Positions 43,423 to 64,000 of a DNA stretch of 64,000 bases are shown one piece after another. The position numbers and the translations under genes were made by a program. The stretch's first letter is position 1. The number at the start of each line of letters is the position of its first letter. The notes under the pieces are model-generated. The model saw only the letters and a list, made by a program, of their open reading frames with translations, had not been told where the DNA came from and ran no database searches. The DNA lies in the IMG/VR virus record IMGVR_UViG_3300033997_000478, positions 1 through 64,000 of that record; one strand, written 5' to 3'.

Positions 43423-45642
43423 ATGCATCATTTCGTAAATCCGGCTGACACGTACGTCCGCAAAGTCGACATTCGACGCACGTATGTCGAGGACACAGCG
43501 CGTTACCTGTCGCTGATGACCAAGCAGCCCTATGACTACTGCTTGAATTTCGTATCAACCCTGGTCGGCCCCGGCGGCACCATGGAGATGAAAGACCCGG
43601 AAGTCATGGTGCTACGCCGTGGCGAGAACGGGGACCGCGAGAAGATCTTCACCACGTTCGGGGGATTCCTGCAATCGGTGTATTCCGAGAACCAGATGCT
43701 GTCCCCGTCGATGACCGCTTATATCCACCCGGACAAGCAGAAGTCGATCCTGGCTCTGTACATTGACGGCAACTTGCAGCTTCGTAAAGAGGCCAAGCAT
43801 GAGATGTTCGTCGCCCAGATGGCCGGTGATGAGATCAAGCGCAAGATCCAGAACTCCAAGCAGACCACGTTCAAGATCAAGAACAACTCGCTGTCGGGCG
43901 CGCACAGCTCGCCGTACACGATCCTGTGGAATAAGTCCAGCCACTCCACGCTGACCTCCACCTGCCGTGTTGCCGTGTCCTACGGCAACACCAACAACGA
44001 GAAGTTCCTGTACGGTAACCGGCATTACTGGTGCCCGGACGTGGCCCGCAATAACATCATCTCCATCATCAACCACACCGATCTGGAGAAGGTCGCTGCG
44101 GTAATGACCAAGTACGGCCTGAAGGCGCCCAGCGTGGAGCTGGTGATGTCGTTGCTGGAACGCTCCACGGAGAACTACTGGCGCAGTACCGAGGAAATGG
44201 CCCGCCTGCGACTGCTGGTGGAGGCACTGGACGATACCCAGCGTTCGGCCTTCGCCTACGTCTCAGATCTGTACCACCTGTCGCTGGGTAACGATGAGTT
44301 CGTTCGCGAGTTCTTCCGTCGCATGTCCAAGCATGACCTTGAACCCATCACCGATATGGACGAGGCCGACAAGTGGACCAGCAAGAAGATGATGGACGAC
44401 AACCTGCTGGCCTTCGTTGGCATGTTGTGCTCGGAAGAGCTGGGTGGCGGTACGCTCAATAACGTCCACGGCGATAACACCAACCTGAAGCTGAAGGACG
44501 TTCGTCCCAAGGACTATGGCGTGTTCGCAGCCACGGTGCGCAACGTCCATGAAACGCTGGACTACTACGAAGATTTCATCCGTGCATTCTGGGTCACCCC
44601 CAACCTGCCGGCTTCGGTCTTCCAAGCGCCGAGCATCATCCGTCGTGGCGCCATTGCCTCGGATACCGACTCGACCATCTTCACCGTGCAGCACTGGACC
44701 ATGTGGTATCGTGGCCAGCTGGACTTCACCAAGGAGTCTGAGGACGTCGCATCGACTGCGGTGTATCTGGCCGGTCAGCTGATCCGTCACGTTCTGGCAA
44801 CCACCTCCGGTGCAATGGGTGTGGCCAAGCAGTTCGTTAACAAGCTGTCGATGAAGAACGAGTTCTACTTCAAGGTGTTCTTCTTGACCTCCCGTGCCAA
44901 GCACTACTACGCCTATCAGGCAGCACAGGAAGGTAACGTCTTTAAGAAGATGAAGAAGGAGATCAAGGGTGTTGCACTGCGCAACTCCAACATCCCGCCT
45001 TCAATCACCAAGAAGTCCAACGCGCTGCTGACCTACGTGATGGATTCGGCACTGCGACTGGAAGAGATCGATCCGCGTCGTCTGCTGCGTTACGTGGCCA
45101 AGGTGGAAGATTCCATCCGTTCTGAAGTGTACCGTGGTTCTTACGACCTGCTGGCAACGGTGGGTATCAAGGCACCTGATGCGTACAAGAAGGGCGAGGA
45201 CACCCCGGCTTATCAGCACTACCTGATGTGGGAGGAGGTCTTTGCCACCACCTACGGTCATGCCCCGCCACCGCCCTACGGTGCGGTCAAGGTTCCGGTC
45301 AAGCTCGAGAAGAAGATCGAGATGAAGGAATGGCTGGACAACATGGAAGACCAAGTGATCGCAGATAAGTTGCGCGCTTGGAATGCCAACACAAAGGGCA
45401 CGATGGCTGTCATGTACCTGCCCGAGCAGGTGTTGGGTATGACAGGTATCCCCAAGGAAATCATCGCCGCGGTGGACATCCGTCCGCTGATTGCGCAGAT
45501 GATGGAAGCGTTCTACCTGATCCTTGAGTCGGTGGGCCTTTTCATGAAGAACGCAGACAACACCCGTCTGGTCTCCGATGAAAAGTGGCTGCTGCGTGAG
45601 GACTGGCCGCTTCCGGAACTGGACATCGACCATTTGGGTTAA
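43423..45642 (+). CDS. Family B DNA polymerase, polymerase domain (phiKZ gp50-like)
   Basis: KIKNNSLSGA (motif B-like) and ASDTDSTIF (motif C); no exonuclease domain, consistent with the split polymerase of phiKZ-like phages. Confidence 0.9.
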   Translation: MHHFVNPADTYVRKVDIRRTYVEDTARYLSLMTKQPYDYCLNFVSTLVGPGGTMEMKDPEVMVLRRGENGDREKIFTTFGGFLQSVYSENQMLSPSMTAYIHPDKQKSILALYIDGNLQLRKEAKHEMFVAQMAGDEIKRKIQNSKQTTFKIKNNSLSGAHSSPYTILWNKSSHSTLTSTCRVAVSYGNTNNEKFLYGNRHYWCPDVARNNIISIINHTDLEKVAAVMTKYGLKAPSVELVMSLLERSTENYWRSTEEMARLRLLVEALDDTQRSAFAYVSDLYHLSLGNDEFVREFFRRMSKHDLEPITDMDEADKWTSKKMMDDNLLAFVGMLCSEELGGGTLNNVHGDNTNLKLKDVRPKDYGVFAATVRNVHETLDYYEDFIRAFWVTPNLPASVFQAPSIIRRGAIASDTDSTIFTVQHWTMWYRGQLDFTKESEDVASTAVYLAGQLIRHVLATTSGAMGVAKQFVNKLSMKNEFYFKVFFLTSRAKHYYAYQAAQEGNVFKKMKKEIKGVALRNSNIPPSITKKSNALLTYVMDSALRLEEIDPRRLLRYVAKVEDSIRSEVYRGSYDLLATVGIKAPDAYKKGEDTPAYQHYLMWEEVFATTYGHAPPPPYGAVKVPVKLEKKIEMKEWLDNMEDQVIADKLRAWNANTKGTMAVMYLPEQVLGMTGIPKEIIAAVDIRPLIAQMMEAFYLILESVGLFMKNADNTRLVSDEKWLLREDWPLPELDIDHLG

Positions 45643-47090: not shown

Positions 47091-49019
47091 ATGGCCACCA
47101 ACACCCCGAACGACAACAACAACGAAACCGGCACCACCAGCGCAGAAGCCATCTTCAACCGCAACTCCGGCAACACCGCCGGTGCCCAGAACGCCGGTGG
47201 CAGCCAGAGCGGCGGCTTCAACCGCAATGCCGGCCGCGCTGCCCGTCCGGGCCTGACCGCTCGCCTGAGCGGCGCACGTGGCGTGGTCTCGCGCCGCCGT
47301 CCGGGTGCCGAACTGGAAGTCATGCGCAAGGCCTTCGAAGAGGCCCTGAGCCAGTTCCACACCTCCGGCCGCCTGCAGGGCGGTGAGAACCTGAAGCTGA
47401 TGCTGATCGATCGCCAGGAACTGGACCGCAAGGTCGAGCTGCTGGTTGCCTACATCCCGATGACCGTCGACAACCAGCTGCACGTGTCGATCTACACCGT
47501 GATCCTGGCCGACCAGAGCGAGAACCTGGACAGCATCAAGTTCCAGGGCACCGGCGGCCGCAACTTCGCCTACACCGTGACCGCAGGCGACGCCTGGGAT
47601 CGCAACCTGTGGGTGAAGGTCGCAGCGATCGTGCAGGAAAACATGGGCGCTGTCGCCATCCAGCACAACGCCGGCGCGCAGGTCATCCCGGCCGAAACCG
47701 ACGTCACCGACAAGGGCCTGATCCACGGCCTGGCGTTCTTCGTCTCCGAAGGCCTGACCCGCACCATCACCGACAAGATCCTGAAGTCCACCGATGACGT
47801 GATCTCGGTCGCCGACATCGGCGACGACGAAATCGTCGAAGGCAAGCTGGTCTACAGCACCCTGCCGCTGACCACCGCCGCCGGCCTGCCGCTGCGTGGT
47901 GACATCCAGGCCAAGCTGAGCTACAGCCAGCGCGGCAACGAGGGTGACCAGCGTGAACGTGCCTTCAGCCTGGACAACAGCCGTCCGCTGGCCGGCGCCG
48001 CCGGCTTCATCGACCTGGGCTGGGAAGACCCGCAGCAGCCGGCCTTCGGCCAGCAGCCGGCCACCCAGCGCTACCGTGCACGCTTCGTCATGACCCGCCT
48101 GGACACCGAAGGTGACTGGATCACCCCGGAACTGCAGCTGCTGTCGCTGGCCGGCGCCACCCTGGTGGCACGTCAGATGGCCTGGGCTCGCATCTGGTCG
48201 CAGGAGTTCCGTACCAAGGAACACGACATCGGCGTGATCGGCTACGAGCTGGCTCCGGGTGGCGAAGCTGAGCGCATCAACACCTCGGCCGCAGCCTTCA
48301 CCAACGAAGCGCTGTACCAGCTGGTGTCGGCGACCATCTACCCGGACATCCTGTTCCAGCTGGACATCGAAGAAGTCGGCGAGCTGTCGTTCCAGAACCG
48401 CGTGCTGCTCGACGCTGCCAACAACAACGCCGATGCGCAGGACGCCGTGATCGCGGCCGCCAACAACCTGACCAACAACGAGTTCACCCGTCTGTGGCAG
48501 GCCGGCACCCCGTTCGTCATGAACGATGGCAACCGCATCCACCTGGGCTACTACGAAGCCAACGACGGTCAGCGTCGTGACATCCGTGACCTGGACTACC
48601 TGTTCATGCTGGAGCGCTTCGGCGCGCAGGATCCGAAGATGGTCGAGCGCTGGCAGGCGACCTTCGACGACGTCGAACGCGACGAAGTCGAGCGTGTGGC
48701 TGAGCGTGAAGACATGATCCGCAAGATCCTGGGCCCGACGGTGACCATCACCGGCTACGCTCGTCGCGTGACCTTCCACCCGCAGGCCCTGGACGTCCTG
48801 CTGGCCGCTTGCGGCGCAGCCGGCCTGACCATCCGTCAGGACTCGCAGTCCTACGGCTTCACCGGTTCGGCCGCTCGCGGTCGTGCTTCGGGCGGTGCCT
48901 TCGCCTTCGGCGGCGGCGCTACGAACAACCTGTTCAGCTCGGGCGTCACCGGCAGCCGTGGTCGCGGCTTCGGCTCCACCTTCACCGGTGGTTCGACCTG
49001 GCGTGGTCGCGGTAACTGA
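47091..49019 (+). CDS. chmA: Chimallin, phage nuclear shell protein (phiKZ gp54 / 201phi2-1 gp105-like)
   Basis: 642 aa, among the strongest codon bias in the window, disordered N- and C-tails, directly upstream of the nvRNAP beta' gene; followed by a strong terminator. Called from size, synteny and family resemblance. Confidence 0.85.
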   Translation: MATNTPNDNNNETGTTSAEAIFNRNSGNTAGAQNAGGSQSGGFNRNAGRAARPGLTARLSGARGVVSRRRPGAELEVMRKAFEEALSQFHTSGRLQGGENLKLMLIDRQELDRKVELLVAYIPMTVDNQLHVSIYTVILADQSENLDSIKFQGTGGRNFAYTVTAGDAWDRNLWVKVAAIVQENMGAVAIQHNAGAQVIPAETDVTDKGLIHGLAFFVSEGLTRTITDKILKSTDDVISVADIGDDEIVEGKLVYSTLPLTTAAGLPLRGDIQAKLSYSQRGNEGDQRERAFSLDNSRPLAGAAGFIDLGWEDPQQPAFGQQPATQRYRARFVMTRLDTEGDWITPELQLLSLAGATLVARQMAWARIWSQEFRTKEHDIGVIGYELAPGGEAERINTSAAAFTNEALYQLVSATIYPDILFQLDIEEVGELSFQNRVLLDAANNNADAQDAVIAAANNLTNNEFTRLWQAGTPFVMNDGNRIHLGYYEANDGQRRDIRDLDYLFMLERFGAQDPKMVERWQATFDDVERDEVERVAEREDMIRKILGPTVTITGYARRVTFHPQALDVLLAACGAAGLTIRQDSQSYGFTGSAARGRASGGAFAFGGGATNNLFSSGVTGSRGRGFGSTFTGGSTWRGRGN

Positions 49020-49306: not shown

Positions 49307-50743
49307 TTGGTGGATTTCGATGCGCTGTTTGAGCAGGCAACGACTCCCCCGGTGATTCTCAACACATTCAACGTCGATACGGTGGATGACAAGACGTTGC
49401 TGGACTCGATGGTGTACACTTACTACGACGGCGATTCGCTGAACGTGGTACCGATGTGTGAATGCCAGCGCACCACTGGTGCCGGCATGATCAATCAGCG
49501 ATGTAGCTTCTGCGGTACGACCGTTCTCCCGCTGAGCGAGCGTCCGCTGGAATCGCTGCTGTGGATGGAACCTCCGGCAGGTGTGGAGACGTTCATCAAT
49601 CCGCAGGTGTGGACCATGCTGTCCAAGGCCATGACCCATGGTGGGATCAATGGTCTGTTGTGGTTGGTGGATCCTCTGGCCATCGTAGGGCCGGAACCGC
49701 ACAAGGAAATTCGACGCCTGATGGATCTGGGCATCGATCGCGGCATCAATCACTTCTACAAGAACTTCGACCAGATCATCGAGCTGCTGTTCAATACGCA
49801 GGTGATCGCCGGTGGCAACCGCCATCAGCGTGAAGAGCTGTGGCAGTTCATCCAGTGCAATCGGCACAAGATCTTCGCCAAGCGACTGCCGGTCCCCTCG
49901 CGTATGGGCTTTGTGGCCGAGCGTACCGTCACCGGTACGTTTGCAGATAAGACCATGAAGCCGATGCTCGATGCGATCCGCACGATCTCCTCGGCAGTGC
50001 ATTCGCAGACGCCACTGGACATCCGCAAGCTCCAGTCGCGCACGATGCTGGCCAATGACCTGGTGGCAACCTACTCCCAGGACTTCATGGCCGCAACGCT
50101 GACCTCCAAGCGGGGTTGGCTGCGTAAGCACGTGTACGGCAATCCGCTGTTCTTCACCTTCCGTGGTGTGATCAGCTCGATGTCCGAGCGCCACGAGTAC
50201 GACGAACTGCACGTGCCGTGGGGCATCTGCATGTCGACCTACTCCAAGCACTTGGAGAACAAGCTCTACAAGACGGCGATCAATGAGCGTGGACGTCCGT
50301 TCACTCCCAACGAAGCTATCGGGCTCATCGAAAGCCATACCCTGCGGTACCACCCGGTCCTCCACAGCTTGTTCAATGAGCTGATCGAGGAATCCCCGCA
50401 CAAGGGCCTGCCGGTGCTGTTCAACCGCAACCCGTCGCTGGACCGTGGTTCGATCCAGGAGTTCTTCATTACCAAGGTGATCGAAGACCCCGAGATCAAC
50501 GCCATCGCAATGTCGGTTCTGTGCCTGAAGGCGCCGAATGCTGACTTCGACGGCGATGCCCTCAACGGCATGGCGATTCTGGACAACCGTTCTGAACGCC
50601 ACTTCGCTGCACTGGCCCCGCACTTCGGTGCACTGGACCTGGATCATCCGCGCCGGATGTCCAACAACCAGGCTTTCCCGCCTCCGGTTGCTGGCGCCAT
50701 CGCGAACATGGTTCATCGCAGCGATCGTACTGTGGTACAATGA
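49307..50743 (+). CDS. Non-virion RNA polymerase beta'-like catalytic subunit (phiKZ gp55-56.1-like); start uncertain
   Basis: Zn finger CEC...CSFC; FNRNPSL; catalytic APNADFDGD; uninterrupted. Confidence 0.93.
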   Translation: MVDFDALFEQATTPPVILNTFNVDTVDDKTLLDSMVYTYYDGDSLNVVPMCECQRTTGAGMINQRCSFCGTTVLPLSERPLESLLWMEPPAGVETFINPQVWTMLSKAMTHGGINGLLWLVDPLAIVGPEPHKEIRRLMDLGIDRGINHFYKNFDQIIELLFNTQVIAGGNRHQREELWQFIQCNRHKIFAKRLPVPSRMGFVAERTVTGTFADKTMKPMLDAIRTISSAVHSQTPLDIRKLQSRTMLANDLVATYSQDFMAATLTSKRGWLRKHVYGNPLFFTFRGVISSMSERHEYDELHVPWGICMSTYSKHLENKLYKTAINERGRPFTPNEAIGLIESHTLRYHPVLHSLFNELIEESPHKGLPVLFNRNPSLDRGSIQEFFITKVIEDPEINAIAMSVLCLKAPNADFDGDALNGMAILDNRSERHFAALAPHFGALDLDHPRRMSNNQAFPPPVAGAIANMVHRSDRTVVQ

Positions 50744-54587: not shown

Positions 54588-55730
54588 ATGAAGCCGGAAT
54601 TGTATGGAGCTTCCATCTCTGACGTCCACCTTGGGCATCAGAGAACGAAGACCCGCCATATTGTCGACAACCTGTGGAAGGCATTTCCCAACGCCGAGTC
54701 AACCGGTCAGTTGGATGTCATCTTCTGGGGTGGCGACTTGTTTGACCGGCTTCTGACCTTGGGTGATGAAGCTGTTCCCCAGATTCTCGTATGGGCCTAC
54801 TCCTTCTTGGAGATGGCCAAGGAAAGAAAGATCCATGTGGTGTTCATGGAAGGCACGCCTTCCCATGACTGGGCCCAAACCAAGCTGCTGAAAACCATTG
54901 CAGAATTCGGTAAGGGTAACCCGTACTTCCACTATATCGACACCCTGTCGATCGTTCACTTCGACGATCTGGATGCCGATGTCCTGTTCGTGCCCGATGA
55001 GTGGCGCCCGGAACCGGATGATACCTGGATGGAAGTACGCGAACTGTTGCGAGAAAAGGGACTGGAGAAAGTCGATTTCACCTTGCTTCACGGTGTCTTC
55101 GATCACCAGCTCCCCGATCACGTAAGCGTCCCCACCCATGTGACTGAGCGGTATGTATCGATCACCCGGCACTTCGTGTTCGGGGCGCACGTGCATACGC
55201 CCTCCGTACGAGATAACTTCCCGGCCGATCACGGCCGGCTCTACGTCAATGGCTCCTTTGATCGACTCGCCCACGGCGAGGAGGAATCGAAGGGCCATTG
55301 GCGCTTCCGCTTCCCGACAGACAAACCACCCCAGTGTTGGTTCGTCGTCAATGAAGGGGCCCAGATTTACAAAACGTTGGACTGCACCAAAAAGTCCCTC
55401 GAAGAATCTTTGGCCTTCCTGCAACAGGTCAGCAAGTTGCCTGAGGACAGCAGCATCCGCGTTCAAGCGAACAAGGATGATCCGATCTTGGCCAACTTCG
55501 ATGTCCTGCGTCGGGAGTATCCCCACATTCACTGGTCCTCCAAGCCCAACGAGGCGGTGGAGAAGGACGTGCAGAAGAACCTGCTCGTGGATCTGCGCTC
55601 GGCGTACACCTCTGTGCAGATCACCCGTGATAATCTTGAAGAGCTGTTGATGGAACGTATCGGTCTGCTGACCAACGATCCTGATCAGCTGCAACGATGC
55701 GCTCGCCGCATTCAGGAAGTGGTCCGATGA
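54588..55730 (+). CDS. SbcD/Mre11-like metallophosphoesterase nuclease
   Basis: ISDVHLG, GGDLFD, GTPSHD, LHG and GAHVH motifs. Confidence 0.9.
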   Translation: MKPELYGASISDVHLGHQRTKTRHIVDNLWKAFPNAESTGQLDVIFWGGDLFDRLLTLGDEAVPQILVWAYSFLEMAKERKIHVVFMEGTPSHDWAQTKLLKTIAEFGKGNPYFHYIDTLSIVHFDDLDADVLFVPDEWRPEPDDTWMEVRELLREKGLEKVDFTLLHGVFDHQLPDHVSVPTHVTERYVSITRHFVFGAHVHTPSVRDNFPADHGRLYVNGSFDRLAHGEEESKGHWRFRFPTDKPPQCWFVVNEGAQIYKTLDCTKKSLEESLAFLQQVSKLPEDSSIRVQANKDDPILANFDVLRREYPHIHWSSKPNEAVEKDVQKNLLVDLRSAYTSVQITRDNLEELLMERIGLLTNDPDQLQRCARRIQEVVR

Positions 55731-56578
55731 ACTTCATTCAGCAAGCAGTGGAAGCACGCGAAAAAGGGCAGACCGTACCGGTGTCAATCGGTACGGCTTT
55801 GGCCATCGAAGCCGGCTGTGGCGTCTACCCAGATCGCCCCGAACATCCGGCACCTTTCGTCTTTGTCCAGCAAGTGTGGATCAACTTGCGCACCTTGGTG
55901 CGTAACCTCTACGCCTGTTTGGACAAGGACGTGAAGGATACCGCCCTGCCCGATGATCTCTGGCAGGCGGGTCTGGAAGAAATGCAGATCATCGAAACCG
56001 CCGTGGCCCAAGCCACCGGTAATCGAACCAAGGTGGTGTTCTACGTGTCCGACTACAAGCGGCCGGAGCAACTCTTCCCTGGAGCCATCATCAAGAAGGC
56101 GATCACCCCCAAGCAGATCTTCCAGCTGACCGTGGAAGAGGACACCCTGAAGTTGATGCTGCAGAACAACCAGCAAAACCACATGGTGCACTTCTACGAG
56201 TTCATGATCGAGGGGAATCACCCCGCCAGTCTGATCATTACCCACATGCCGGTTGACTTGCTCGCCCGGTTCAGGTTTGAGCGACTGGAGTTGCTGGAGT
56301 CCCATACCGGCGCTATCAAGAAGCCGGCGCAATGGAACACGAAACTGACCAACGGCAAAGAGTTGACCAACATCCCCTTCAACCGGATGACGTTGCAGCT
56401 GTTTGGGGATAACGGAAACCTGTTTTCGCCCCTGTCCATCACCATTCGTCGAGAGGTGGTGCGACTAGCCGGTATCGACCAGTGGACGGCCGTGACCAGT
56501 ATGGAAAAGGTGCGTGCCACAATCAGTGGGAAGATGGACAACGACGAGCATCGCAAGACCGTGCTCAAGCTGATGTAA
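55727..56578 (+). CDS. Conserved protein (gp66-like), possibly a FEN/T4 RNase H-like fold
   Basis: ATGA coupling; WINLRTLVRN and LIITHMPVDLL loosely resemble PIN/FEN strands; fold assignment is tentative. Confidence 0.55.
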   Translation: MNFIQQAVEAREKGQTVPVSIGTALAIEAGCGVYPDRPEHPAPFVFVQQVWINLRTLVRNLYACLDKDVKDTALPDDLWQAGLEEMQIIETAVAQATGNRTKVVFYVSDYKRPEQLFPGAIIKKAITPKQIFQLTVEEDTLKLMLQNNQQNHMVHFYEFMIEGNHPASLIITHMPVDLLARFRFERLELLESHTGAIKKPAQWNTKLTNGKELTNIPFNRMTLQLFGDNGNLFSPLSITIRREVVRLAGIDQWTAVTSMEKVRATISGKMDNDEHRKTVLKLM

Positions 56579-56630: not shown

Positions 56631-57434
56631 ATGTCTGACGGCCAACAGAATCGTACCAACAAACCGCCCATCCTCACCATGGGCGTCCAGAGCCTGAAGC
56701 TCTATGGCGAGAACATCAACGGCGCGACCAAGTCGCCGATGCTCTCGCTGAAGATCAAGCGCAACGAGCCCGTCCTGGCCGTGTCCACCGGTGTGGAAGG
56801 TGACAAGGACTACGGCAAGTTCGAAGTGGCCATCGACTGGCCGACCCTGTTCCAGATCTTCCAGCACGTCGACGACGCTGCCAACAATCCGGAATTCCCC
56901 GGCGCCAAGATCGAGTTCCACCAGAAGCGCTACATGCGTGCCCAGGGTGGGCAGTCGCAGACCCCGATGCTGGAAGGCCAGATCGTCGTCGGCCGCATCG
57001 CCGCTTCGGGCGTGATCTACATCGGCGTGTCGACCTGGGACAACGATCGTCCCAAGTGCAAGTACATCTTCCGTCCGATCATCGATGCACGCAAGAAGGT
57101 CCAGGTCTTCAAGGGCGACGGCACCCCGTGGGGTGAAGGCGAACTGAGCCAGGCCTACGCCAAGGGTTGGGTGCGCATGATGTCGCAGATCGCCGTCATG
57201 ATGGCCAGCCAGGAATACGTGGCACCGGACTACAGCCAGCAGAACGGCGGTGGCGGTCAGCGTCAAGGCGGCGGTGGCGGTAGCTGGGGTAACCGCGGCG
57301 GTGGCAACGGCGGTGGTGGTTACAACCAGAACCGCGGTGGCGGTAATGGTGGTGGCGGCTACCAGCAGAACCAACAGCAGTCCAGTGGCGGCGGTTCGTC
57401 CGGCGGCTGGGGTGATGACGACATCCCCATGTAA
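56631..57434 (+). CDS. gp67-like protein with a G/Q/N-rich linker and an SSB-like acidic tip; candidate ssDNA-binding protein
   Basis: Ends GGSSGGWGDDDIPM; directly upstream of the gp68-like gene. Confidence 0.7.
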   Translation: MSDGQQNRTNKPPILTMGVQSLKLYGENINGATKSPMLSLKIKRNEPVLAVSTGVEGDKDYGKFEVAIDWPTLFQIFQHVDDAANNPEFPGAKIEFHQKRYMRAQGGQSQTPMLEGQIVVGRIAASGVIYIGVSTWDNDRPKCKYIFRPIIDARKKVQVFKGDGTPWGEGELSQAYAKGWVRMMSQIAVMMASQEYVAPDYSQQNGGGGQRQGGGGGSWGNRGGGNGGGGYNQNRGGGNGGGGYQQNQQQSSGGGSSGGWGDDDIPM

Positions 57435-57455
57435 GGGATGCCGAGTTGAGGAACG

Positions 57456-57476
57456 AGGGGGCTTCGGCCCCCTCAA
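57456..57476 (+). terminator. UUCG hairpin after the gp67-like gene
   Basis: GAGGGGGC-TTCG-GCCCCCTC followed by AATTCTT. Confidence 0.65.
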
Positions 57477-57788
57477 TTCTTCCCCTTAAACAAGGCGCTG
57501 AAAAAGGCCTAATCCTATTACGGTGGATAGACATGTCCAAGCAACACATGCAGTGCATCTACTGAACAACCTCAAGACCTCACCGAAGCTCTCAATAGCG
57601 CCAAGGCGTATTGGGGGTTTCGAGGCAACGTAAGTTGCCCCTCCATTCGAGGGGACGTGTGGCGTATAAACAGAATAACCGAATTTCAAACCCACACTAT
57701 CCTTTCGAACACACCTATCAGAAATAGCGCAAGGACTGCGCTCTGGGTAGTTCGCAATAAGAAGTAAAACCGAAGGGAACCCGCCAAG

Positions 57789-59384
57789 ATGAAAATCAGT
57801 GCAATCTCAGCCCCCGGTCAAGGGTTGACGACCGTCATCACCGAACATGGTGGCGAACGACTGACATGGGATGTTAGTCCGACATACGGCCGCAGTAATA
57901 GCCGTGGTGGTAAAGGCAGTATCGCCGATGATGAAATTGACAGCGCCAAGCTGTTTGATGAATTCAACGGCTACGTGGCAACGCTCAGCATGGAACGGCA
58001 GCAGGGTATCTGGGAAGCATTCCAGGACATCTACGCCATCTTCCGTGCGGACTACGAACTGGAAACGGCCACCGAGAAGCTCAAGCAGAAGATCCGCTCG
58101 CTCTACTCGATGATCCCGATGGCAGAGTTGCGCCACTGGCTCCAGTTCTACGGCAACATCAACTATCCGGCCACCGTCAAGGAACGGTTGGATGGGGATG
58201 AAATCACCGACCGCTCTCCCAGCCGTACGTACCTGCGTGCGGACTACTTCGGTCTGGTGGTCTTCACCGTCGCACTGCGACCGATGCTGCCGATCTGGGG
58301 TGAGTACATCGCAGCCACCCGGCGCGACTCGGGCAACAACTACAAGGAGAACCGAGCCTGGGGTCTGCTGTATCACACCGAGCTGCCGCGCTCTCCGGAA
58401 TACGATCGTCTGCTGGAATTCATCACCCACACCAGCCAGAACTTCATCAAGCAGGACGAGACCTTCACTGCAATTCTCGAAGGCCTCAGCACTGCTGAGA
58501 TGCCGAGCTGGATGCTGGCCATCACCGCCGTACGGCGTCTGGTGATCAGTGAAATCCATCCCGATCCGGATCAGCGCAACAAGAACCTGATCGCGATGGT
58601 CCACTTCTTCATTGACAGCAAGATCCTGTCGATGCCCCGCGACTTCGGTCGCAAGTTCGGTGGTCGCATCAGCGACAAGAAGCCGCCAGCCGGCCAGTCC
58701 GAGGAAAGCAACTCCTCGGTGGTGGAGCAGTACAAGATCAAGCCGGACATTCCCGACGGCCACATCGTTTCGCTCAACGTGTACTCCGAAGATCCCCACC
58801 GGATGTTGCTGGTGCGCGATCCCGACGTACCGACGGAACTGCTCGAAAAGTGCCTGAACTCCATCAAGGACATGGCACCGCGCGACATCGACGCCAGCGG
58901 CATGTGGCTCACCCGCTGGGCCATCAGTCCCGTACTGCCGGCCCGAGCCATCGATCTGCTGCTGATCGATTCGCTGAAGAATACCATGGCTGTCTCCCAG
59001 GCAACCCTGTGGCATTGGGGTTTCTACGATCTGGCAGCACTGGTCACTGCAACACCGCAGATCACCAACGATGAAATCATTACCGCTCCGGGTGAATCGC
59101 GTGGTAAGGTCAACAAGGAGATGATGTCTCAGTTGGCCCAGAACTACACGTACCACCCCCAAGTCAAGCGCAGCACTTCGGTCCGTCAGGCCCGAGGCGA
59201 CGTGCGTGCAATCGACGCACTGGCTGATCTGATTTCCCGCAACGACTGGATCCTCAATGCTCCCTCAGAGCTGATCGAGGCCTCCTCCACCATCGGCGAC
59301 TCGCGGTTCATGATGCCGCCGCCGCTGCTGCGTGTCCAGTTGGGGCATCTGCTACTCCACCCGAAGTTCAACAGGATTGATTAA
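57789..59384 (+). CDS. Non-virion RNAP promoter-specificity (sigma-like) subunit, phiKZ gp68-like
   Basis: 531 aa, mostly helical; TYLRADYFGL...LRPMLPIWGEY; position between the gp67-like and gp69-like genes. Confidence 0.75.
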   Translation: MKISAISAPGQGLTTVITEHGGERLTWDVSPTYGRSNSRGGKGSIADDEIDSAKLFDEFNGYVATLSMERQQGIWEAFQDIYAIFRADYELETATEKLKQKIRSLYSMIPMAELRHWLQFYGNINYPATVKERLDGDEITDRSPSRTYLRADYFGLVVFTVALRPMLPIWGEYIAATRRDSGNNYKENRAWGLLYHTELPRSPEYDRLLEFITHTSQNFIKQDETFTAILEGLSTAEMPSWMLAITAVRRLVISEIHPDPDQRNKNLIAMVHFFIDSKILSMPRDFGRKFGGRISDKKPPAGQSEESNSSVVEQYKIKPDIPDGHIVSLNVYSEDPHRMLLVRDPDVPTELLEKCLNSIKDMAPRDIDASGMWLTRWAISPVLPARAIDLLLIDSLKNTMAVSQATLWHWGFYDLAALVTATPQITNDEIITAPGESRGKVNKEMMSQLAQNYTYHPQVKRSTSVRQARGDVRAIDALADLISRNDWILNAPSELIEASSTIGDSRFMMPPPLLRVQLGHLLLHPKFNRID

Positions 59385-63239: not shown

Positions 63240-64000
63240 ATGAAACAGGTCAACGAACACCGCGCCGAATTGGCGTCCTCAGCATCGTTCAACCCGTTCA
63301 TCGCCCATGATTCCTCTGCCCGCGTGCAGATGATGGGCTCGCATCTTTCGCAAGCACTCCCCGTCAAGGATTGCCAACCGCGCCGGATTCTTACCGGCAT
63401 GGAACGGGAATTTGGCCGGGCCACGTTCAATGTCGAGATTCCGGTGGATGCGGAAATCATCGACATCATTCACAAGTTCACCGATACAGCCGGTGCAGGT
63501 GGTATTCGCATCAACCCCACCACCGTGATCATCTACATGGATGCTCGCACCAACCAGTTCGATGCCGTGGAGTTCAACAGCTACCACAGCATGCACCAGT
63601 CGTTCGGCTTCAACTTCGTCCGCACCCAGGCCATGCGCAACCTGCGTCCTGAGCAGTCGATCCCGGCCGGCACCGTACTGGGTCGTTCGCCGACACTGGA
63701 TGATCAGGACAACTACCGGATCGGTCTGAACGTCAAGTCGGCGTTCATGTCCATTCCCGGCGTTACCGAGGACGGCTTCATCGTCTCCGAAAGCCTGTGC
63801 AAGCGCATGACCACCACGTGCATCAAGAAGACCAGCTTCAGCTGGGGCAAGACGTGGTATCCGCTGAACTTGTACGGCGATGAGAAGAACTACAAGCCGA
63901 TGCCCGACATCGGTGATCGCATCCGTGACGATGGCCTGATCTGCACCCTGCGCCGCATGGACCAGGATACGGACATCATGTACTATCCGCTGGAGATGTC
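63240..64000 (+). CDS. Non-virion RNA polymerase beta-like subunit, N-terminal part (phiKZ gp71-73-like); runs off the window
   Basis: Not in the supplied ORF track. ATG 63240 gives MKQVNEHRAELASSASFNPFIAHDSSARVQMMGSHLSQA and later GLNVKSAFMSIPGVTEDGFIVSE, both RpoB-like. Confidence 0.9.
   Translation, partial: MKQVNEHRAELASSASFNPFIAHDSSARVQMMGSHLSQALPVKDCQPRRILTGMEREFGRATFNVEIPVDAEIIDIIHKFTDTAGAGGIRINPTTVIIYMDARTNQFDAVEFNSYHSMHQSFGFNFVRTQAMRNLRPEQSIPAGTVLGRSPTLDDQDNYRIGLNVKSAFMSIPGVTEDGFIVSESLCKRMTTTCIKKTSFSWGKTWYPLNLYGDEKNYKPMPDIGDRIRDDGLICTLRRMDQDTDIMYYPLEM

What the first reader, a model, noticed from the sequence alone, without database searches (positions are those of the whole stretch)
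56631..57434. gp67-like protein carries a bacterial SSB-type tail ending DDDIPM
Seen: a folded domain of about 205 aa with two beta-strand-run plus helix units, then an ~60 aa G/Q/N-rich linker (QQNGGGGQRQGGGGGSWGNRGG...), then GWGDDDIPM-stop (57414-57434). Established: bacterial SSB ends in DDDIPF after a G/Q/N/P-rich linker, and that tip recruits ExoI, RecQ, PriA, RecO and Pol III chi. Inference: the N-domain does not look like a bacterial SSB OB-fold (its repeat pattern suggests Whirly/PC4), so this may be a phage ssDNA-binding protein that mimics the host SSB hub. It could recruit or sequester host repair enzymes, or license their entry to the nucleus. It lies between the SbcD/gp66-like genes and the sigma-like/PicA genes.
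Basis: partly seen in the sequence, partly recalled or inferred. Interest (0 to 1): 0.72.

Follow-up and report, generated by a model that had tools for sequence, protein, structure and literature searches.

The report
Phage ChmC carries SSB-type tail
This gene encodes the ChmC/Imp6 RNA- and ssDNA-binding protein of a nucleus-forming jumbo phage, and its disordered tail ends in the acidic docking motif that bacterial SSB uses to recruit partner enzymes, a family-wide feature that the ChmC papers I could search do not describe.

Summary
ORF 56631-57434 (+) encodes 267 aa: a folded domain (about residues 20-205), a 53-aa linker that is 53% Gly plus Q/N, and the tip GWGDDDIPM followed by a stop.

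The protein is the orthologue of phiKZ gp67 / PhiPA3 gp61, the published ChmC/Imp6. It sits in the conserved SbcD-gp66-ChmC-gp68-PicA block of a complete 324-kb chimallivirus. The AF2 model matches Whirly/PUR/MRP folds, not an OB fold.

The new point is that the tip is a family trait. Among 254 full-size relatives, Pro at -2 occurs in 88% and the tip motif in 82%. The consensus of the last seven residues, FDDDIPF, equals the E. coli SSB tip. Terminal Met is fixed in the window's clade (19 of 20). The model phages (phiKZ, PhiPA3, 201phi2-1, Goslar) have degenerate tips, which may explain why this went unnoticed.

What the tip binds is unresolved: the PicA+ChmC complex prediction gave no answer. 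I favour a docking and autoregulatory peptide for phage-encoded partners over hijacking of host SSB partners. The genome has no match to three canonical SSB families, so ChmC could be the phage's SSB-like hub.

The parts
56631..57434 (+). ChmC/Imp6 orthologue CDS (267 aa plus TAA stop)
   Evidence: ORF list and translation. phrog_3284 E 3.5e-39 over residues 7-266. tblastn to Xanthomonas phages RTH11 and LucasX (about 40% identity, E 1e-41), PhiPA3 gp61 (E 6e-15) and phiKZ gp67 (E 8e-13).
56631..57245 (+). Residues 1-205: Whirly/PUR-like nucleic-acid-binding domain (first ~20 aa low confidence)
   Evidence: AF2 pLDDT above 90 over about 20-205, two beta-sheet-plus-helix repeats. Foldseek PDB top hits are MRP1/MRP2 2gia, WHY2 4kop, PBF-2 1l3a and Pur-alpha. 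VIA-align wide gives StWhy2 Z 8.2, PBF-2 7.9, MRP 7.1, Pur-alpha 6.5, and unrelated folds at 4.9 or below. Domain pI is 8.9. K34 and K63 align with the PhiPA3 RNA-binding residues K30 and K59.
57246..57404 (+). Residues 206-258: intrinsically disordered G/Q/N-rich linker
   Evidence: 53 aa with G 28, Q 8, N 6, S 5, R 3, Y 2, W 1 and no D/E. pLDDT is below 50. The family-wide linker is 41% G, 13% N and 8% Q.
57405..57431 (+). Residues 259-267: acidic tip GWGDDDIPM with free C-terminus (SSB-Ct-like)
   Evidence: Translation. The family consensus of the last seven residues, F-D-D-D-I-P-F, is identical to the E. coli SSB tip. Pro at -2 occurs in 88% of 254 relatives. Terminal Met is found in 19 of 20 leaves of the window's clade.
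57448..57482 (+). Terminator-like hairpin (G+C stem, UUCG loop) 14 nt after the stop codon
   Evidence: Sequence read directly and MFE fold of the intergenic region. The consensus terminator scan did not list it, so its function is inferred.
57789..59384 (+). gp68-like non-virion RNA polymerase subunit (context; its PhiPA3 orthologue gp62 co-purifies with ChmC)
   Evidence: phrog_3209 E 7e-108. Synteny with phiKZ gp68 and PhiPA3 gp62. The GFP-ChmC pull-down is reported in PMC11077065.
59391..60863 (+). PicA/Imp1 orthologue (context; the phiKZ protein binds gp67 directly)
   Evidence: phrog_3141 E 4.5e-78. Synteny. Imp1-gp67 co-purification at about 1:2 in bioRxiv 10.1101/2024.03.27.586873.
54588..56578 (+). 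SbcD-like (54588-55730) and gp66-like (55697-56578) genes upstream (context)
   Evidence: phrog_100 E 1.6e-42 with a weak Metallophos hit, and phrog_3229 E 5.7e-77.
47091..49019 (+). Chimallin (ChmA) gene, which shows that the genome is a nucleus-forming chimallivirus (context)
   Evidence: PF25677 Chimallin_Phikzvirus E 5.6e-50.

Best explanation
The gene encodes the ChmC/Imp6 protein of an uncultured chimallivirus related to Xanthomonas phages RTH11 and LucasX.

Shown here:
- It has a Whirly/PUR-like domain.
- A roughly 53-aa Gly/Gln/Asn-rich disordered linker follows it.
- The protein ends in a short acidic tip with a free hydrophobic C-terminus.
- This tip is conserved across the whole ChmC family, and its consensus (FDDDIPF) is that of bacterial SSB.

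Taken from orthologues in the literature:
- PhiPA3 ChmC is a tetramer that binds ssRNA and, less tightly, ssDNA.
- It is very abundant and essential, and it sits at the nuclear shell.
- The phiKZ orthologue binds PicA directly.
- Removing the whole PhiPA3 tail abolishes condensates and shell localisation.

Inferred mechanism:
- The tail works like the SSB tail. The linker gives reach and weak multivalent self-association (condensates).
- The tip is a short linear docking peptide. It inserts its Pro-hydrophobic-COOH end into a pocket on partner proteins.
- When free, it can fold back on the basic nucleic-acid-binding face and so tune RNA/DNA binding and condensation.
- The tip varies by phage lineage (F, M, W, L; IPNF; degenerate in some model phages), whereas bacterial SSB tips, by general knowledge, are near-invariant. 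I therefore infer that the main partners are phage-encoded and co-evolve with it. Candidates are PicA, the gp68-type nvRNAP subunit, ChmB, the RNase H-clamp Rhc and the DNA polymerase.
- Which partner binds the tip is not established.
For: Identity:
- searches give homology and conserved synteny, including in IMG/VR loci.
- one search finds chimallin and a divergent PolB in the window.

Fold:
-.

Tip conservation:
- In 120 word-indexed homologues, 104 have Pro at -2.
- A further 138 representatives come from a profile search that found 1470 clusters at E<=1e-3.
- Pooled over 254: P(-2) 88%, motif 82%, exact DDDIPF 25.
- Positional consensus is F.21/D.54/D.71/D.73/I.46/P.88/F.54. E. coli SSB ends PPMDFDDDIPF.
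- None of 124 family members hits Pfam SSB, so the hits are not mis-collected SSBs.

Beyond the hexapeptide:
- The last 23 aa of a double-domain member (P0159) are 70% identical to the last 23 of E. coli SSB, pairwise E 3e-8.
- The language-model features of residues 200-267 alone give SSB-family clusters in 59 of 100 named hits. This is a lead only.

Lineage specificity:
- Terminal-residue changes on the tree are 68, against 122 for shuffled labels.
- The window's clade is 19/20 Met.
- Cultured phages on one host genus carry different tips.

Literature:
- DeltaC loses shell binding and condensates but keeps the tetramer and RNA binding.
- Imp1-gp67 form a direct complex.
- The GFP-ChmC pull-down brings ChmB and RNAP subunits. 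The Rhc pull-down brings ChmC.
- The SSB tip and linker properties are described in PMC7145534 and PMC5872125.
Against: - No partner of the tip was identified. The only complex prediction (PicA plus two ChmC) scored 0.00 and is explicitly no evidence either way.
- The published deltaC removes linker and tip together, so its phenotypes cannot be assigned to the tip.
- An exact match of the family consensus to the bacterial tip is not what a purely phage-internal interaction predicts. It fits an origin from, or mimicry of, SSB.
- The raw association between position -3 and the terminal residue, which might suggest pocket co-evolution, has no support after phylogenetic correction.
- The near-invariance of host SSB tips is taken from general knowledge and PMC5872125. 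I could not sample it here.
Confidence: 0.5

Rival explanations
1. Host-SSB mimicry. The abundant ChmC displays a bacterial SSB-Ct so as to bind host SSB-interacting proteins (ExoI, RecJ, RecQ, PriA, Pol III chi, RNase HI, Topo III). It either sequesters them from host or phage ssDNA or brings them to the nuclear shell and PicA for use or import.
For: - The family consensus FDDDIPF is identical to the E. coli SSB tip.
- Some members match far beyond the hexapeptide: P0159 is 16/23 identical to the E. coli SSB tail, E 3e-8.
- Enterobacterales phages carry near-canonical tips: Proteus phage 10 KDFDDDIPF, PCH45 YDEDIPF, pEa_SNUABM_54 PPAFDTDIPF.
- ChmC/Imp6 binds the import factor PicA, and a host topoisomerase is imported in phiKZ.
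Against: - Tips differ from the DDDIPF tip that I take these hosts' SSB to have (general knowledge). P. aeruginosa phages have IPNF or MPSF. Xanthomonas phages and the window's whole clade have IPM. Ralstonia phages have IPW or ISF. 201phi2-1, Goslar, Eowyn and a Vibrio phage are degenerate. ChmC is nevertheless essential in Goslar and phiKZ.
- The main text's summary of the GFP-ChmC pull-down names ChmB, RNAP subunits and ribosomal proteins, and no SSB partner.
- The paper on a host-gene screen for PCH45 does not mention ssb, priA, recQ, sbcB or rnhA.
- The literature states that nuclear import does not use terminal signals.
Confidence: 0.2
2. There is no specific partner. The acidic end is only an 'electronegative cluster', as proposed in the ChmC paper. 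It shields the basic RNA-binding face and tunes solubility and condensate formation by charge alone.
For: - This is the interpretation in PMC11077065.
- The tip carries 3 acidic residues and no basic one, next to a basic domain (pI 8.9) and a linker with 3 Arg.
- Degenerate tips in some phages keep acidity plus a hydrophobic end.
- SSB tails are known to contribute to phase separation (papers listed).
Against: Charge alone does not explain 88% Pro at -2, 90% I/L/F/M/V at -3, or a hydrophobic last residue in over 90% of members. It also does not explain their fixed register relative to the C-terminus. That pattern is typical of a peptide-in-pocket contact.
Confidence: 0.2
3. The tip is a relic. 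The tail was captured from an ssb gene, and the motif persists without present function in this lineage.
For: Tail similarity to SSB extends into the linker in some members. Several lineages have let the motif decay.
Against: The motif is retained across hundreds of clusters that share only about 30% identity in the folded domain. It sits next to a freely evolving low-complexity linker, and Met has been fixed clade-wide for a long time. Neutral relics do not stay this conserved.
Confidence: 0.05

Closest known systems
ChmC (PhiPA3 gp61; Goslar gp176) = Imp6 (phiKZ gp67)
   Same: Homologous sequence, the same place in the conserved chimallivirus gene block, the same Whirly-like fold, and the same N/G-rich disordered C-terminal region followed by an acidic end.
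   Different: - Only 28-30% identical.
- The window's tip is near-canonical SSB-Ct (DDDIPM). The studied proteins end in FDDEIPNF, FDEDMPSF or VAFDGLAF.
- Only two of the six PhiPA3 RNA-binding residues align with K/R here.
- Tetramer formation, RNA binding and PicA binding are not shown for this protein.
Bacterial SSB C-terminal tail (disordered linker plus acidic tip MDFDDDIPF; E. coli SSB)
   Same: - The tail is laid out in the same order: Gly/Gln-rich disordered linker of 50-60 aa, then D-D-D-I-P-hydrophobic-COOH.
- The family consensus is identical over seven residues.
- The carrier is a homotetramer in the characterised PhiPA3 orthologue, and the tail drives condensates in both.
   Different: - The nucleic-acid-binding domain is Whirly-like, not an OB fold. 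There is no PF00436 match and no significant global similarity.
- The last residue is Met, not Phe.
- The orthologue prefers ssRNA.
- Binding of SSB partner proteins is untested.
Whirly / PUR / MRP1-MRP2 nucleic-acid-binding proteins
   Same: These are the best structural matches by two independent aligners over most of the domain. They are tetrameric ssDNA/ssRNA binders.
   Different: No sequence-level match to Pfam Whirly, MRP or PurA. The repeat is beta-beta-beta(-beta)-alpha with an rmsd of 5-7 A. None of these families is known to me to carry an SSB-type tip.
Acidic C-terminal tails of phage SSBs (T7 gp2.5 ending in Phe; T4 gp32)
   Same: From general knowledge: an acidic, disordered C-terminus that both competes with ssDNA for the binding cleft and docks the phage's own polymerase, helicase and related proteins. 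This is the working model proposed here.
   Different: Unrelated folds. The genome has no match to the gp32 or gp2.5-like families. Those tails lack the I-P-F ending.

Membership tests
ChmC/Imp6 (phrog_3284) | Sequence homology to PhiPA3 gp61 / phiKZ gp67 | tested here: met
   phrog_3284 E 3.5e-39 over nearly the full length. tblastn E 6e-15 and 8e-13.
ChmC/Imp6 (phrog_3284) | Location in the conserved block SbcD-gp66-ChmC-gp68(nvRNAP)-PicA of a chimallin-encoding genome | tested here: met
   ChmA is at 47091-49019.
ChmC/Imp6 (phrog_3284) | Whirly-like fold of tandem beta-sheet/helix repeats | tested here: met
   AF2 model. Foldseek and VIA-align top hits are Whirly, MRP and PUR.
ChmC/Imp6 (phrog_3284) | Disordered N/G-rich C-terminal region followed by an acidic segment | tested here: met
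ChmC/Imp6 (phrog_3284) | Homotetramer; binds ssRNA more tightly than ssDNA; binds phage mRNAs; forms condensates | not testable with these tools
   Known for PhiPA3 ChmC only. The complex job that held two ChmC copies gave no answer.
ChmC/Imp6 (phrog_3284) | Direct binding to PicA/Imp1 | tested here: inconclusive
   Complex prediction PicA + 2x ChmC(14-267) scored 0.00, 'no answer'. Binding is shown biochemically for phiKZ.
Bacterial SSB (PF00436) | OB-fold ssDNA-binding domain | tested here: not met
   No PF00436 hit in this protein or in any of 124 family members. The fold is Whirly-like. BLASTP against E. coli SSB is not significant.
Bacterial SSB (PF00436) | Gly/Gln/Pro-rich intrinsically disordered linker of about 50-60 aa | tested here: met
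   Residues 206-258, 53% G, pLDDT below 50. It lacks Pro here, but other family members have P/A/Q-rich linker ends.
Bacterial SSB (PF00436) | C-terminal acidic tip D-D-D-I-P-F with free carboxylate | tested here: met
   DDDIPM, 5 of 6 identical with a conservative F->M. The family consensus is FDDDIPF, and exact DDDIPF occurs in 25 of 254.
Bacterial SSB (PF00436) | The tip binds SSB-interacting proteins | not testable with these tools
No binding data exist.
Whirly (PF08536) / MRP (PF09387) / PurA | Sequence match to the family profile | tested here: not met
   No Pfam family at E<=1.
Whirly (PF08536) / MRP (PF09387) / PurA | Shared fold | tested here: met
   StWhy2 Z 8.2, PBF-2 7.9, MRP1/2 7.1, Pur-alpha 6.5, clearly above unrelated rows. 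Foldseek probability is 1.00 for 2gia.
Phage SSBs of the gp32 (PF08804) or gp2.5/Enc34 (PF10991) type | Sequence match anywhere in the genome | tested here: not met
   No match at E<=1 in the complete 324-kb genome. The same holds for PF00436.

The most novel reading that the evidence does not exclude
ChmC is the chimallivirus counterpart of SSB. It would be a Whirly-fold tetramer that took over (or captured) the bacterial SSB tail and serves as the single-strand nucleic-acid hub of the phage nucleus.

- It would coat nascent RNA and exposed ssDNA.
- Through the conserved tip it would dock the phage's own RNase H-clamp, polymerases and the PicA/shell machinery.
- This would link replication, transcription and transport.
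- In lineages with a canonical tip it may in addition engage host SSB partners.
Probability: 0.3. Interest if true: 0.8.

Novelty: new member of a known kind. Interest (0 to 1): 0.62.

Why it matters
ChmC/Imp6 is essential, highly abundant and conserved in all nucleus-forming jumbo phages. How it attaches to the nuclear shell, to PicA and to the transcription and replication machinery is unknown.

A short, strongly conserved C-terminal peptide identical in consensus to the SSB docking tip gives a precise handle that is cheap to test: tip deletions, Pro->Ser, peptide pull-downs. It could separate tip-specific docking from the condensate role so far assigned to the whole tail.

It also raises a concrete answer to what replaces SSB in these phages. 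This genome has no match to three canonical SSB families.

It would be a clear case of one disordered tail module serving on two unrelated nucleic-acid-binding folds.

Practically, the best-studied phages have degenerate tips. Canonical-tip phages such as Proteus phage 10, Serratia PCH45 or the Xanthomonas phages may therefore be better models for this question.

Tried and rejected
- Complex prediction of PicA (37-row alignment) with two copies of ChmC 14-267 (121-row alignment) scored 0.00. The controls were not run. It is no evidence for or against binding, and the only job of that kind is now used.
- The search for related loci with the full ChmC alignment failed because it had no conserved 7-10-column stretch. 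The PicA alignment gave only 15 IMG/VR loci. That is enough to confirm synteny and tips, but too few for tip/partner covariation.
- I tried to sample bacterial SSB tips across taxa through the E. coli record. W handles have no relatives. Only the E. coli tip was read directly, so invariance of host tips rests on literature and general knowledge.
- Covariation inside the motif was tested. [F/W]-P-M occurs in 19/47 M tips, against [F/W]-P-F in 8/123 F tips. The independent-pairs test has no power (median p 1), so I make no claim.
- I compared the P0159 tail with the E. coli ssb 3' end at the DNA level, looking for recent transfer. There is a 17-nt identical run over the PPMDFD codons, but only 52 of 84 positions are identical. 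This is not decisive.
- phmmer of the window tail against PDB sequences returned only a low-complexity chance hit.
- The supplementary pull-down table of the ChmC paper is not held.
- I considered a C-terminal degron or an import signal. Nothing supports a degron, and the literature says that import uses surface patches rather than terminal signals.
- An annotation artefact is rejected. The stop is followed by a strong hairpin, and orthologues end at the same motif.
Full report
**1. The observation**

The ORF at 56631-57434 on the + strand runs from ATG to TAA and encodes 267 aa ending GWGDDDIPM.

An AlphaFold2 model built on 121 sequences has mean pLDDT 78.7. Residues about 20-205 are above 90, and residues 213-263 are below 50. 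The folded part has two sheet-plus-helix units: strands 24-67 with helix 70-85, and strands 92-146 with helix 169-194.

Residues 206-258 contain 28 Gly, 8 Gln, 6 Asn, 5 Ser, 3 Arg and no acidic residue. The last nine residues carry three Asp and no basic residue.

Only this ORF, out of 1919 six-frame ORFs of at least 50 aa in the whole genome, ends in such a motif.

**2. What the gene is**

The window belongs to a complete 324,428-bp virus record with terminal repeats and 58% G+C. It encodes:
- chimallin at 47091-49019 (PF25677, E 5.6e-50);
- a divergent family-B DNA polymerase at 43423-45642;
- a non-virion RNA polymerase beta' fragment at 49307-50743.

Around the ORF lie an SbcD-like gene, a gp66-like gene, a gp68-like gene and a PicA-like gene (phrog_100, 3229, 3209, 3141). 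This is the same order as phiKZ 65-69 and PhiPA3 59-63 and as the Xanthomonas phage LucasX. The order also recurs in IMG/VR loci.

The protein matches phrog_3284 (E 3.5e-39). By tblastn it matches RTH11 and LucasX (about 40% identity), PhiPA3 gp61 and phiKZ gp67.

PhiPA3 gp61 is ChmC. According to PMC11077065 it has these properties:
- a predicted Whirly fold;
- a homotetramer by SEC-MALS;
- Kd of 58 nM for ssRNA and 184 nM for ssDNA;
- binding to phage mRNAs, high abundance and early expression;
- an N/G-rich disordered tail followed by an S/D/E-rich 'electronegative cluster';
- loss of both condensates and nuclear-shell localisation when residues 204-251 are removed, while the tetramer and RNA binding are retained.

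phiKZ gp67 is also Imp6. It co-purifies directly with Imp1/PicA at about 2:1 (bioRxiv 10.1101/2024.03.27.586873). The gene tolerates no transposon insertions. In Goslar, ChmC comes down with the RNase H-clamp protein Rhc together with RNA and DNA polymerase subunits.

**3. The fold**

Foldseek against the PDB ranks these first:
- trypanosome MRP1/MRP2 (2gia, probability 1.00);
- plant WHY2, PBF-2 and StWhy2;
- Pur-alpha.

Against Swiss-Prot models it finds Pur-alpha 1 and WHY1-3.

An independent search that does not lean on Foldseek gives StWhy2 Z 8.2, PBF-2 7.9, MRP 7.1, Pur-alpha 6.5 and SsgA-like 5.2. Everything else is at 4.9 or below.

There is no Pfam match to SSB, Whirly, MRP or PurA and no significant BLASTP similarity to E. 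coli SSB.

K34 and K63 align with two of the six residues whose mutation abolishes RNA binding in PhiPA3 ChmC. The other four positions are not basic here.

**4. The tip is a family character**

This is the main result.

- Among 120 homologues from the word-indexed search, 104 have Pro at -2. The last residue is F 58, M 28, W 16, L 7, I 5.
- A profile search of 1.84 billion cluster representatives found 1470 clusters at E<=1e-3 and 629 at E<=1e-30. Its 138 new top hits show the same ending.
- Pooled over 254 full-size members, Pro(-2) is present in 223 (88%).
- The motif acidic - acidic/small - I/L/M/V/F/W - P - hydrophobic-end is present in 208 (82%).
- Exact DDDIPF occurs in 25, and DDD[IL]PF in 35.
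- The commonest residues at -7 to -1 are F, D, D, D, I, P, F. That is exactly the end of E. coli SSB, read here as PPMDFDDDIPF.
- None of 124 members matches Pfam SSB, so these are not SSBs collected through their tails.
- P266 is one of only twelve columns that are at least 90% conserved in the alignment.

The similarity can extend into the linker. Some members are tandem duplications of the Whirly domain: P0122, P0159, P0227 and the annotated 470-aa protein of Erwinia phage pEa_SNUABM_54. The last 23 residues of P0159 are 70% identical to the last 23 of E. coli SSB (pairwise E 3e-8).

As a lead only, language-model features of residues 200-267 alone place SSB-family clusters in 59 of 100 named hits.

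**5. Variation of the tip**

- The terminal residue has a strong phylogenetic signal: 68 changes on the tree, against a mean of 122 and a minimum of 116 for shuffled labels.
- The window sits in a clade of 20 leaves, of which 19 end in Met.
- Other clades are fixed for I-P-W, V-P-L or F/W-P-M.

Tips of cultured phages:

| Phage | Tip |
|---|---|
| Proteus phage 10 | KDFDDDIPF |
| Serratia PCH45 | YDEDIPF |
| Salmonella SA002 | FDESIPF |
| Burkholderia FLC9 | SEDLPF |
| Xanthomonas RTH11 / LucasX | DDDIPM |
| PhiPA3 | FDDEIPNF |
| phiKZ | FDEDMPSF |
| Ralstonia RSL2 | DFDDISF |
| Noxifer | DFDDFVM |
| 201phi2-1 | SFDW |
| Goslar | FDGLAF |
| Eowyn | DDDVWG |

The four phages on which ChmC has been studied have the least canonical tips. 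This probably explains why the ChmC paper calls the segment an electronegative cluster and never mentions SSB (0 occurrences). No paper in the searchable library links ChmC or phiKZ with SSB or DDDIPF.

**6. How it most likely works**

*Shown.* The tail has the SSB design, and the tip is under strong purifying selection in a fixed register to the C-terminus.

*Known for SSB* (PMC7145534, PMC5872125). The tip is the docking site for at least 17 partner proteins. From general knowledge, it also binds back to the DNA-binding core. The linker and tip contribute to cooperativity and phase separation.

*Inferred for ChmC.*
- The tip is a peptide-in-pocket docking element and an autoregulatory competitor of the basic nucleic-acid face.
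- The linker provides reach and condensation.
- The tip drifts by lineage while, by general knowledge, bacterial SSB tips hardly vary. ChmC also remains essential in phages whose tips no longer resemble SSB. I therefore think the main receptors are phage-encoded and co-evolve with the tip.
- Candidates named by the literature are PicA, the gp68-type polymerase subunit, ChmB and Rhc.
- This genome has a 499-aa protein with an RNase H domain at G000:295231-296730.

The complete loss of shell localisation in the published tail deletion fits a docking role, but it cannot be assigned to the tip. My one complex prediction (PicA with two ChmC chains) returned no answer.

**7. Rivals**

*Host-SSB mimicry.*
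- For: the exact consensus and the extended similarity in some Enterobacterales-type members.
- Against: the lineage-specific and degenerate tips.
- Against: no SSB partner is named in the main text's summary of the GFP-ChmC pull-down.
- Against: there is no mention of such genes in the paper on a host-factor screen.

*A purely electrostatic role.* This does not explain the conserved Pro and the hydrophobic positions.

*A neutral relic.* This is incompatible with the degree of conservation.

*A stronger reading.* The evidence does not exclude that ChmC is the SSB equivalent of these phages. The complete genome has no match to PF00436, gp32 or gp2.5-type families. The PhiPA3 orthologue binds ssDNA at 184 nM, is a tetramer and is among the most abundant early proteins. 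Three negative profile searches do not prove the absence of another SSB.

**8. Comparison and novelty**

The protein is a member of the ChmC/Imp6 family. All sequence, context and fold criteria are met; biochemical criteria are untested.

It is not a member of the bacterial SSB family, because the OB fold was tested and not met. Its tail nevertheless works-like, and may derive from, the SSB tail. At the fold level it resembles Whirly/PUR/MRP proteins without profile-level membership.

The gene itself is a new member of a known kind. What appears to be unreported is the family-wide SSB-type tip, which gives a directly testable handle on an essential and poorly understood protein.

I score interest at 0.62. 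The identity is ordinary, the conserved motif is striking and actionable, and the mechanism is still inferred.

Noticed in passing
window 57435-57788: The 354-nt spacer between ChmC and the gp68-like gene is long for this dense genome and is strongly structured. MFE is -123.7 kcal/mol against -96.2 +/- 6.1 for shuffles (z -4.5, 0 of 100 shuffles as stable). It starts with a GC-rich UUCG hairpin (57448-57482) right after the stop. There is no Rfam match at E below 0.4.
   Followed up: partly
P0122, P0159, P0227; L036:1-1413 (Erwinia phage pEa_SNUABM_54 CDS); L035:6001-7263: Some chimalliviruses encode a ChmC with two tandem Whirly domains (419-470 aa) and a single Q/P/A-rich linker plus tip (PPMDFDDSIPF, PPLDFDTDIPF, PPAFDTDIPF). 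This recalls the two-OB-fold SSBs of Deinococcus/Thermus. The P0159 tail is 16/23 identical to the E. coli SSB tail.
   Followed up: partly
L002, L003, L023, L027 (PhiPA3, phiKZ, 201phi2-1, Goslar ChmC): The model phages used for all ChmC/Imp6 experiments have the most degenerate tips (IPNF, MPSF, SFDW, FDGLAF). Proteus phage 10, Serratia PCH45, Salmonella SA002 and the Xanthomonas phages keep near-canonical ones.
   Followed up: yes
G000:C1:295231-296730 (outside the window; locus L034:1276-2772): A 499-aa ORF has an N-terminal RNase H domain (PF00075, E 2e-21) and a roughly 300-aa C-terminal part without a Pfam match. It is probably the orthologue of the recently described RNase H-clamp Rhc, which pulls down ChmC in Goslar.
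   Followed up: partly
window 63240-64000 (ORF runs on to 65639 in the genome): A 799-aa ORF ends in a very long poly-acidic tail (D/E/N/G-rich, over 20 acidic residues in the last 30). It is a different kind of acidic C-terminus from the ChmC tip.
   Followed up: no
ChmC family tips: Bulky residues at -3 (F/W) go with terminal Met: 19 of 47 M tips against 8 of 123 F tips. Val at -3 goes with terminal Leu. This suggests a co-evolving pocket, but it is not significant after phylogenetic correction.
   Followed up: partly
window 55697-55730: The SbcD-like and gp66-like ORFs overlap by 34 nt as listed from the first start codon. The true gp66-like start may lie further downstream.
   Followed up: no
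L032 (Xanthomonas phage RTH11 record): The deposited RTH11 genome is linearised so that base 1 is the first base of its ChmC gene.
   Followed up: no
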